Positions 18,626 to 18,783 of a stretch of 64,000 bases of DNA are shown here, in pieces. Origin of the DNA: Mustelus asterias (lineage: Eukaryota); the NCBI RefSeq assembly GCF_964213995.1, contig NW_027590164.1:124001-188000 (forward strand), read 5' to 3'. The stretch's first letter is position 1, and each line of letters begins with the position of its first letter. A program made the position numbers and the translations under genes. The notes under the pieces are model-generated. The model saw only the letters and a program-made list of their open reading frames with translations. It ran no database searches and was not told where the DNA came from.

Positions 18626-18783
18626 GTAACTATGACTCTCTTAGAAGGGTCTCACTAGAGAGTCATCTCTGGGTAGTTACCTCTGTGAATGTTATTGGCG
18701 TGTTTTGGCATTCACAGTGAAGTTGTGCCTCCTCGCGGCCCCGTCGGTAACCTTGGTGGCTTGCCACCAAGGGCTAAACAAGC
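18626..18783 (+). ncRNA. R2-retrotransposon-type 5' end: 28S target-site leader plus HDV-like ribozyme (P1 5' strand missing)
   Basis: GTAACTATGACTCTCTTA (28S R2/I-PpoI site) at 18626-18643; GCC-TCCTCGC-GGC (P3/L3), CCCGTC (P1 3'), GG (P1.1), P4 hairpin 18751-18772, GCTAA (J4/2), TTGT/ACAA (P2). Confidence 0.85.

What the first reader, a model, noticed from the sequence alone, without database searches (positions are those of the whole stretch)
18626..18783. Stand-alone R2-type HDV-like ribozyme with 28S target-site leader inserted in a tRNA-Val repeat, far from rDNA
Seen: this unit alone carries 158 bp that replace ~20 bp of the repeat consensus (ggataatgtt | insert | gcaattttcc). It opens with GTAACTATGACTCTCTTA. 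That leader is complementary to downstream agagagtcat (18657-18666) and gtagttac (18673-18680). A 12-bp hairpin follows (18683-18717), then TTGT-GCC-TCCTCGC-GGC-CCCGTC-GG-TAA-[10-bp inverted repeat 18751-18772]-GCTAA-ACAA. Established: the 18-mer is the 28S rDNA sequence just upstream of the R2/I-PpoI site; NCC-UCCUCGC-GGN and GCUAA are the P3/L3 and catalytic J4/2 elements of the HDV antigenomic ribozyme; R2 elements free their 5' end from the rRNA co-transcript with such a ribozyme, often using 28S GGCGGG as the P1 5' strand. Inference: CCCGTC is the partner of that GGCGGG, which is absent here, so this copy should be inactive in cis. The insert stops at the end of P2 and has no ORF, 3' UTR or TSD. 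It could be a captured piece of self-cleaved R2 RNA or a member of a ribozyme-only dispersed family, and it implies an R2 lineage in this genome.
Basis: partly seen in the sequence, partly recalled or inferred. Interest (0 to 1): 0.9.

Follow-up and report, generated by a model that had tools for sequence, protein, structure and literature searches.

The report
Dead R2 ribozyme fragment outside rDNA
A 156-base piece from the front end of an R2 jumping gene, carrying most of its self-cutting RNA motif but lacking two strands that the motif needs, has recently landed in a tRNA-derived repeat; it is real but most likely an inert fossil.

Summary
One unit of a tRNA-Val-derived tandem repeat carries foreign DNA found nowhere else in the window. 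It is 156 bp (18626-18781), not 158. It opens with 28S rDNA positions -21 to -4 relative to the R2 site. An HDV-like ribozyme core follows: P3/L3, P1.1, P4 and a J4/2 cytosine.

Rfam gives only a sub-threshold HDV hit (19.9 bits against a cut-off of 50), and only in a focused scan.

Public-run contigs hold a parent element that is identical over all 156 bases and runs on for at least 1,264 more. Its next letters complete a 7-bp P2. The insert therefore ends inside P2, not at its end. It also lacks the 28S GGCGGG strand of P1.

I read it as a recent, non-canonical, probably inactive head fragment of an R2-lineage element. R2 ribozymes that cleave at -28, and R2 in cartilaginous fish, are already published. 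That makes this a new member of a known kind.

I could not see the parent's 28S junction or its ORF.

Other first-stage notes on this genome (s1-892770, s1-891044, s1-891047, s1-892300; unchecked) report similar R2-type heads outside rDNA. Two diverged copies with non-28S letters upstream appeared in the reads. A dispersed family remains possible.

The parts
18626..18781 (+). Whole foreign segment (156 bp): truncated head of an R2-lineage element
   Evidence: Unique in the window. Absent from 6 of 6 sister units. Matches parent contigs X4 record 16 and X2 record 13 with 0 differences over exactly 18626-18781.
18626..18643 (+). [quoted passage not shown]
   Evidence: Identical to the 28S target oligo printed in PMC13000458 Table 1 and to the I-PpoI site duplex in PMC2175346. 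Single match in the window.
18644..18649 (+). 28S/element junction letters GAAGGG: a cryptic, mismatched P1-like 5' strand
   Evidence: Pairs 5 of 6 with CCCGUC, with an internal A.G mismatch. It is the point where the sequence departs from the 28S oligo.
18657..18680 (+). Anti-leader: an inverted copy of the 28S leader that closes a long interrupted hairpin in J1/2
   Evidence: 10 of 10 and 8 of 8 pairs with the leader. Part of the minimum-free-energy fold.
18683..18717 (+). Second J1/2 hairpin (12 bp)
   Evidence: 12 of 12 pairs. Present in both the minimum-free-energy and centroid structures.
18720..18726 (+). P2 5' strand AAGUUGU; only 18723-18726 has a partner in the insert
   Evidence: Hand pairing with ACAA plus the parent's next letters CUU (loose end). 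In the insert, 4 of 8 pair when the helix is extended into the flank.
18727..18739 (+). P3 (GCC/GGC) enclosing L3 UCCUCGC
   Evidence: Aligned to the Rfam RF00094 consensus gCCUCCuCGc-GGc with high posterior probability. Chance expectation 0.03. PMC5035012 names CCUCCUCGUGG as the most conserved R2 ribozyme sequence.
18740..18745 (+). P1 3' strand CCCGUC, with no partner in cis
   Evidence: 0 six-mers in 17800-18726 pair 6 of 6 (0.35 expected); six pair 5 of 6 (6.7 expected). Complementary to 28S GGCGGG.
18746..18747 (+). P1.1 GG, pairing with C18731 and C18732 of L3
   Evidence: 2 of 2 pairs.
18751..18772 (+). P4 hairpin
   Evidence: 10 of 10 pairs by script; 9 bp with a CUUG loop in the fold. 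Aligned to P4 of RF00094.
18773..18777 (+). J4/2 GCUAA with the putative catalytic C18774
   Evidence: Aligned to GGCuAA of RF00094.
18778..18781 (+). Truncated P2 3' strand ACAA; the parent continues CUU...
   Evidence: The parent contigs run on after 18781 with CTTTGTTAAAAACAACGCAGAGACCGTAGA (table 7).
18616..18625 (.). Left target flank GGATAATGTT of the repeat unit
   Evidence: Conserved in the sister units.
18782..18791 (.). Right target flank GCAATTTTCC; about 20 bp of the unit are missing between the two flanks
   Evidence: Alignment A1.

Best explanation
What it is: a recent, non-functional 156-bp 'head' fragment of an R2-lineage non-LTR retrotransposon that lives in this genome.

How the parent works: in the parent, 28S rRNA and element are co-transcribed. 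An HDV-like ribozyme then forms. P1 pairs 28S GGCGGG (-28 to -23) with the element's CCCGUC. J1/2 is compacted into two hairpins; the first pairs the 28S leader (-21 to -6) with an element-encoded inverted copy of it. P2 is 7 bp. P3/L3, P1.1, P4 and a J4/2 cytosine make up the core. Cleavage at -28 would free the element RNA with a 28-nt rRNA leader.

What the window copy lacks: the first 7 nt, which are the whole P1 5' strand, and the last 3 nt of P2. It should therefore not cleave itself.

How it got there (inferred): the fragment's ends lie 7 nt and 3 nt inside the ribozyme's own ends. There is no target-site duplication, no 3' UTR and no A-tail, and about 20 bp of target are lost. The likeliest route is that a ribozyme-domain RNA or its cDNA, trimmed at both ends, was reverse-transcribed and captured at a chromosome break by end joining. 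Normal target-primed insertion is less likely.

Shown versus inferred: the anatomy, the uniqueness of the insert, the existence and identity of a longer parent, and the missing strands are shown. The -28 P1, the inactivity and the capture route are inferred.
For: The insert is unique in the window and replaces about 20 bp of the repeat.

The leader equals 28S -21 to -4, and GGCGGGA lies directly upstream of it in 28S.

The -28 class of R2 ribozymes is documented, with J1/2 of 23 to over 700 nt, P2 of at least 5 bp and a variable P4 (PMC3774820). The typical ~28-nt retained leader is restated in PMC13580325.

RF00094 is the best Rfam family in the focused scan. P3/L3, P4 and J4/2 align, while the P1 pairs are marked non-standard.

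All helices were counted.

Parent contigs: X4 record 16 (1,427 nt) and X2 record 13 (409 nt) match 18626-18781 with 0 differences, then continue with other letters. Their 7 and 2 extra upstream letters did not align to the window flank.

The related organism B copy (X6 record 23, 9 differences) has C18741U and U18744C. Both keep pairing with GGCGGG. U18744C would break the pair with the A of GAAGGG (hand pairing).

The sister repeat units are only 72.9-91% alike, whereas the insert is 156 of 156 identical to the parent. The insertion is therefore younger than the repeat.

No 6 of 6 P1 partner exists upstream.
Against: No Rfam hit at gathering score or in the whole-window E-value scan. 19.9 bits is far below the cut-off of 50.

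The parent's upstream letters, its ORF and its 3' end were not shown, so 'R2' rests on the leader and the ribozyme alone. Read laying drops human-like records silently, which would hide 28S junctions.

No listed contig bridges the flank/insert junction (419 pieces not shown). The insertion therefore has no independent support outside the assembly.

X1 is indexed as holding all 11 words, yet nothing was laid on the insert.

G18747A in the organism B copy weakens P1.1.

Two diverged copies (X4 records 17 and 18) and four other first-stage notes hint at a systematic dispersed family rather than a one-off capture.

The capture route is inferred from junction anatomy only.
Confidence: 0.72

Rival explanations
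1. It is the remnant of a longer off-target, target-primed insertion of the 28S-headed element. A later deletion removed everything 3' of position 18781 together with about 20 bp of the repeat.
For: The parent is at least 1.4 kb long. Other first-stage notes report 1.1-1.2 kb and longer R2-type elements outside rDNA in this genome (unchecked). Tandem repeats are prone to deletion. A 5' end near the RNA 5' end is what a full-length insertion would give.
Against: The deletion breakpoint would have to fall within 3 nt of the ribozyme's 3' end by chance, in an element of at least 1,420 nt. The insert shows 0 differences from the parent in 156 nt, which leaves little time for a second event. No trace of a 3' UTR or A-tail remains.
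Confidence: 0.18
2. It is a member of a ribozyme-only, or 28S-headed non-autonomous, mobile family that is still spreading outside rDNA. Or it is an enzyme strand that could cut 28S rRNA in trans through CCCGUC.
For: X4 records 17 and 18 carry ~90% similar leaders with non-28S letters upstream, and their downstream letters are visibly homologous to 18689-18718. Notes s1-892770, s1-891044, s1-891047 and s1-892300 describe similar heads (unchecked). HDV ribozymes work when split into enzyme and substrate strands (recalled, not checked here).
Against: Only one copy lies in 64 kb. There is no target-site duplication and no 3' module for reverse-transcription priming. P2 is cut to 4 bp, whereas R2 ribozymes have at least 5. 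No listed holder run is on record as RNA. The same alignment start at 18626 in every contig is forced by the window's own boundary.
Confidence: 0.07
3. It is a chance resemblance or an assembly artefact.
For: The Rfam score is below threshold. No bridging contig is listed.
Against: An exact 18-mer of 28S and an exact 13-mer of the HDV core occur together, with chance expectations of 0.06 and 0.03. All helices are in the right order. The same 156 nt sit in a longer element in independent runs from 2 studies. The insert sits in register inside a repeat unit, which would need two precise false joins.
Confidence: 0.03

Closest known systems
R2 retrotransposon 5' HDV-like ribozymes of the '-28' class (earwig, silkmoth, jewel wasp Ng, zebra finch and others; Eickbush, Burke & Eickbush 2013, PMC3774820)
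   Same: A 28S leader is retained in the RNA. The P1 3' strand lies directly after P3/L3 and is complementary to the GC-rich 28S -28 to -22. There is a CCUCCUCG(Y)GG core, a long J1/2, a variable P4 and a catalytic C in J4/2.
   Different: This copy is not in 28S, lacks the P1 5' strand and 3 nt of P2, and has no ORF or 3' UTR. Whether the J1/2 hairpin between the 28S leader and an inverted copy of it is described for other R2s I could not tell; the figures and supplements were not visible.
Hepatitis delta virus ribozyme (Rfam RF00094)
   Same: P3/L3 GCCUCCUCGC-GGC, a P4 hairpin and GGCUAA align to the consensus.
   Different: 19.9 bits against a gathering score of 50. P1 is absent. About 100 nt of J1/2 are inserted. 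The P2 sequence is unrelated.
R2 SIDEs, short internally deleted non-autonomous R2 derivatives of Drosophila (PMC3414825; listing and start of abstract only)
   Same: They keep the 5' ribozyme of R2 without the ORF.
   Different: SIDEs keep the 3' end needed for target-primed reverse transcription and insert in 28S. This fragment has no 3' module and lies in a tRNA-derived repeat.
R2 families without target specificity (platyhelminths, PMC5035012, passages; German cockroach, PMC7650587, title and abstract start only)
   Same: R2-lineage sequence outside the 28S site.
   Different: Those are described as R2 or R2-like elements with their own, non-rDNA insertion. Here the 28S leader shows descent from an rDNA co-transcript, and only the head is present.
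Endonuclease-independent LINE insertions and retroelement cDNA captured at double-strand breaks
   Same: No target-site duplication, a target deletion, 3' truncation, no A-tail and blunt junctions.
   Different: I do not know of this being described for R2 heads. The mechanism is inferred, not shown.

Membership tests
HDV-like self-cleaving ribozyme | P1 helix of about 6-7 bp whose 5' end is the cleavage site | tested here: not met
   0 six-mers in 17800-18726 pair 6 of 6 with CCCGUC. The best is 5 of 6 (GAAGGG at 18644-49, with an A.G mismatch). The Rfam alignment marks the P1 pairs as non-standard.
HDV-like self-cleaving ribozyme | P3 (3 bp) closing an L3 with the conserved U...G and the two C that form P1.1 | tested here: met
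   GCC-UCCUCGC-GGC; P3 3 of 3 and P1.1 2 of 2. Aligned to the RF00094 consensus.
HDV-like self-cleaving ribozyme | P2 helix closing the double pseudoknot (at least 5 bp in R2 ribozymes, PMC3774820 section 16) | tested here: not met
   Only UUGU/ACAA, 4 bp, in the window. The parent's letters give 7 bp, AAGUUGU/ACAACUU (hand pairing).
HDV-like self-cleaving ribozyme | Catalytic C in J4/2 after P4 | tested here: met
   GCUAA 18773-77, aligned to GGCuAA. P4 10 of 10.
HDV-like self-cleaving ribozyme | Covariance-model score at or above the curated threshold | tested here: not met
   RF00094 19.9 bits against 50, E = 1.9 on 601 nt. No hit. No other HDV-like Rfam family appears at E up to 10.
HDV-like self-cleaving ribozyme | Self-cleavage activity | not testable with these tools
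   Needs a co-transcriptional cleavage assay.
R2 retrotransposon (5' end) | Junction with 28S at the R2 site, with upstream 28S letters attached | tested here: met
   18626-18643 equals 28S -21 to -4. The sequence departs from 28S 3 nt before the R2 cut, or carries a 2-nt addition. Silkmoth junctions likewise lack 2-3 bp.
R2 retrotransposon (5' end) | P1 3' strand complementary to 28S -28 to -23 | tested here: met
   CCCGUC with GGCGGG, 6 of 6 including one G.U (hand pairing). Two substitutions in the organism B copy keep this pairing.
R2 retrotransposon (whole element) | Single ORF with RT and a C-terminal restriction-like endonuclease, plus a 3' UTR; insertion in 28S | tested here: not met
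   None of this is in the insert. The window's RT ORFs match L1 ORF2 better than R2. The parent's downstream 1,264 nt or more were not shown.
R2 SIDE (non-autonomous R2) | 5' ribozyme joined to the R2 3' end | tested here: not met
   The insert ends inside P2, and repeat sequence follows at once.

The most novel reading that the evidence does not exclude
This cartilaginous-fish genome may hold a recently active family of R2-derived elements. They would carry the 28S leader as part of the element and insert outside rDNA. Ribozyme-only 'heads' such as this one would arise repeatedly, because the compact ribozyme fold survives RNA decay and is then reverse-transcribed and integrated. That would be an R2 lineage escaping rDNA, and a new way of making 3'-truncated retrocopies.
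Probability: 0.2. Interest if true: 0.65.

Novelty: new member of a known kind. Interest (0 to 1): 0.35.

Why it matters
It shows that an R2 lineage with a '-28' type HDV-like ribozyme was active very recently in this genome: the copy is 156 of 156 identical to its parent.

It also shows that R2 RNA or cDNA can end up outside rDNA by a route that keeps the 5' end and loses the 3' end. That is the opposite of the usual 5' truncation.

By itself the copy is an inert fossil. Its value is as a marker. A genome-wide census of such heads would test whether R2 has left the rDNA in this lineage. The parent's compact J1/2, in which the 28S leader pairs with an inverted copy of itself, is a simple design that could be tested for its effect on cleavage.

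Tried and rejected
Rfam. The scan at gathering score and the whole-window E-value scan show no HDV-like hit. Only the focused scan does.

Metagenome scan. I scanned for the degenerate core motif to collect real 28S/R2 junctions. 0 of 120 have the 28S leader within 900 nt upstream. The only low-GC locus, L015, is an AAA-ATPase coding region (read by eye). This was a dead end, and no covariance model or covariation test could be built.

Alternative P1 partners. I searched for one upstream and found none at 6 of 6. A P1 made of the leader GUAACUA with 18674-80 was rejected, because that partner does not follow a P3/L3.

R2 protein in the window. The RT ORFs are APE-LINE-like.

Microhomology at the junctions. 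There is 0-1 nt at either end. I cannot tell a gapped 8 of 10 resemblance between the ribozyme's 3' end and the deleted target segment from chance (by eye).

Contig depth. The tool warns against using it as a copy number, so I did not.

Earlier findings. The look-up by sequence was blank.

Literature. Searches for HDV-like ribozyme plus shark and for R2 element / outside the rDNA / ribozyme found no description of ectopic R2 head fragments. Figure S2 of PMC3774820 and Tables S1, S2 and S7 of PMC13188248 may hold shark R2 5' ends that would settle the parent's identity.

I did not fold or scan a version with the 28S strand restored, because that would mean typing a joined sequence.

Full report
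**What is there**

blastn of the insert against the whole window finds only itself. The 200 nt on its left find 8 other places and the 200 nt on its right find 9. The insert therefore sits inside a repeated unit.

The units recur about every 0.9-1.4 kb. They run on the plus strand around 16.6-21 kb and on the minus strand around 36.8-47 kb. They are 72.9-91% alike.

Some units carry a recognisable tRNA: 17442-17514 on the minus strand, and 45172-45244, which ARAGORN calls tRNA-Val. The tRNA-like stretch of this unit is not called by any tool.

In alignment A1, 6 of 6 sister units read GGATAATGTT, then about 20 nt, then (A/G)CA.ATTT.CC. This unit has foreign DNA in place of the 20 nt. Because GCA belongs to the repeat, the foreign segment is 18626-18781, 156 bp and not 158.

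No rRNA gene is detected in the window.

**The leader**

GTAACTATGACTCTCTTA occurs once in the window even with 3 mismatches allowed (0.06 expected).

A published 28S target oligo for R2 reads ...ACGGCGGGAGTAACTATGACTCTCTTAAGGTAGCC..., with the bottom strand cut after ...AAGG (PMC13000458, Table 1, passages seen). The I-PpoI site duplex holds the same letters (PMC2175346, one passage). The 18-mer is therefore 28S -21 to -4, and GGCGGGA is -28 to -22.

The window departs from 28S after CTCTTA. That is 3 nt before the R2 cut, or it reflects a 2-nt addition. Silkmoth R2 junctions likewise lack 2-3 bp (PMC3774820 section 10).

**The ribozyme core**

A script counted these helices:
- P3, GCC/GGC, 3 of 3
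- L3, UCCUCGC
- P1.1, 2 of 2
- P4, 10 of 10
- J4/2, GCUAA with C18774
- P2, UUGU/ACAA, 4 of 4

GCCTCCTCGCGGC is unique in the window (0.03 expected). PMC5035012 (passages) names CCUCCUCGUGG as the most conserved stretch of the R2 ribozymes of fly and zebra finch. The window differs from it by one pyrimidine.

Rfam gives no hit at gathering score and none in the whole-window E-value scan. On 18400-19000 the best family is RF00094, HDV ribozyme, at 19.9 bits, E = 1.9 over 4,227 families. P3/L3, P4 and GGCUAA align well, and the P1 pairs are marked as non-standard. The model was built on HDV itself. It also has to pay for the absent P1, so I read the hit as weak support and not as proof.

**J1/2**

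The leader pairs with an inverted copy of itself: 18632-41 with 18657-66 (10 of 10) and 18626-33 with 18673-80 (8 of 8). A 12-bp hairpin follows. The whole RNA folds better than all 200 shuffles, z = -3.03.

R2 ribozymes tolerate 23 to over 700 nt between P1 and its partner (PMC3774820). Two hairpins would bring the 28S P1 strand next to P2 (inference).

**P1**

The strand after P3 is CCCGUC. With GGCGGG it gives 6 pairs, one of them G.U (by hand). Eickbush et al. 2013 show that many R2 lineages form P1 with 28S from -28 to -22 and cleave at -28 (abstract, sections 12 and 16, and passages). A 2026 review restates the typical ~28-nt leader (PMC13580325, passages).

In the window the seven letters before 18626 belong to the repeat. 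No six-mer in 17800-18726 pairs 6 of 6 with CCCGUC (0.35 expected). Six pair 5 of 6 (6.7 expected). One of these is GAAGGG at the 28S/element junction, with an internal A.G mismatch.

**Related sequence elsewhere**

The index lists six runs that hold the stretch or a part of it, from 3 studies. None is on record as RNA. I laid four runs on 18300-19100.

Parent contigs. X4 record 16 (1,427 nt) and X2 record 13 (409 nt) match 18626-18781 with no difference. Both then run on with CTTTGTTAAAAACAACGCAGAGACCGTAGA, for 1,264 nt in X4. Upstream they have 7 and 2 more letters, which did not align to the window's flank and were not printed. A longer parent element therefore exists at a place that is not this locus.

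P2 in the parent. Its next letters, CUU, extend P2 to AAGUUGU/ACAACUU, 7 bp (by hand). The insert therefore stops 3 nt short of the end of P2. In the window the extension into the flank does not pair (4 of 8).

Copy in a related organism. X6 record 23 (organism B, 998 nt) matches with 9 differences. C18741U and U18744C both keep pairing with GGCGGG. U18744C would break the pair with the A of GAAGGG. This favours the 28S strand as the true P1. G18747A weakens P1.1, which counts against an active copy there.

Diverged copies. X4 records 17 and 18 match only 18626/7-18688/7, with 6 and 5 differences. Their downstream letters are visibly related to 18689-18718. Their upstream letters are unlike the 28S oligo. 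At least two diverged leader-bearing copies therefore lie in non-28S surroundings. The common start at 18626 is forced by the window's own boundary and says nothing about their true 5' ends.

Limits of this evidence:
- The tool drops human-like records without notice, so 28S junctions may be hidden.
- X1 is indexed as holding all 11 words, but nothing of it was laid on the insert.
- No listed piece bridges flank and insert; 419 pieces were not shown.
- X2 record 12 and X6 record 20 are sister units without the insert, not empty alleles. X2 record 12 carries 32 other letters in its right-hand piece (18779-19094).

**Age and origin**

The repeat units differ by 9-27%, while the insert is 156 of 156 identical to its parent. 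The insertion is therefore much younger than the repeat.

It has no target-site duplication, no A-tail and no 3' module. About 20 bp of target are lost, and there is no clear microhomology.

Normal target-primed reverse transcription starts at the 3' end and gives 5'-truncated copies (PMC13580325). This copy is the reverse of that.

Its ends lie 7 nt inside the predicted RNA 5' end (-28) and 3 nt inside the end of P2. In other words, it is almost exactly the ribozyme domain.

I therefore favour capture of a ribozyme-domain RNA or cDNA at a chromosome break. This resembles endonuclease-independent LINE insertions (recalled, not seen here). A longer off-target insertion later cut down by deletion is the main rival, and it needs a breakpoint coincidence.

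**What is known**

R2 ribozymes that cleave at -28 are established (PMC3774820). R2 in cartilaginous fish is published: R2Sqj of an angel shark in PMC5035012, and 'sharks and stingrays' in PMC13188248 (passages). R2 families without target specificity are known (PMC5035012 abstract passage). A paper on non-site-specific R2-like retrotransposons of the German cockroach exists (PMC7650587; title and abstract start only). Non-autonomous R2 SIDEs are known in Drosophila (PMC3414825; listing only).

My two searches found no account of ectopic head-only R2 fragments. Only Creative Commons papers and bioRxiv preprints were searched, and supplements were closed.

**Earlier notes of this scan**

All are unchecked. 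They call the genome a shark and list similar heads and many R2-clade copies outside rDNA. Together with X4 records 17 and 18, they keep open the reading that a dispersed family exists.

**Verdict**

The object is a recent, probably inert fragment of a known kind of element. Interest is moderate to low for this copy alone, and higher only if the dispersed family is confirmed.

Noticed in passing
window 38612-42310 (+): A non-LTR retrotransposon with a GDSL-esterase-like ORF (38612-39457), then an AP-endonuclease domain (39638-41149) and RT (41192-2310 of the same run, i.e. 41192-42310). This is CR1/L2-type architecture, broken into three ORFs.
   Followed up: partly
window 8461-10305 (-), 53970-55439 (-), 22861-23799 (-), 47367-48305 (-): Further RT-bearing ORFs (Pfam RVT_1). 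For the two longest, the best solved-structure match is LINE-1 ORF2, ahead of the R2 proteins, so they are not R2.
   Followed up: partly
window 16600-21000 (+) and 36800-47100 (-): Two oppositely oriented arrays of a 0.9-1.4 kb unit carrying tRNA-Val-like sequence in various states of decay. tRNA-Arg(ACG) genes lie at 16626-16700 and 28185-28259, and a tRNA-Thr at 58936-59008.
   Followed up: partly
window 15215-15372 (-): Sub-threshold Rfam matches pile up on one stretch: mir-297 at 46.6 bits against a gathering score of 90, sno_ZL1 and SCARNA7. This is probably a simple or structured repeat. I did not examine it.
   Followed up: no
run X1: The index says this 33-million-letter run holds all 11 sampled words of the insert, yet no contig of it was laid on 18570-18893. 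One possible cause is the tool's silent removal of human-like (28S-bearing) records.
   Followed up: no
L015 338-357 (-): The only low-GC metagenome hit to the ribozyme core motif lies in a coding region that reads ...ILLVGPPGTGKT... (AAA ATPase Walker A). It is a chance match.
   Followed up: yes
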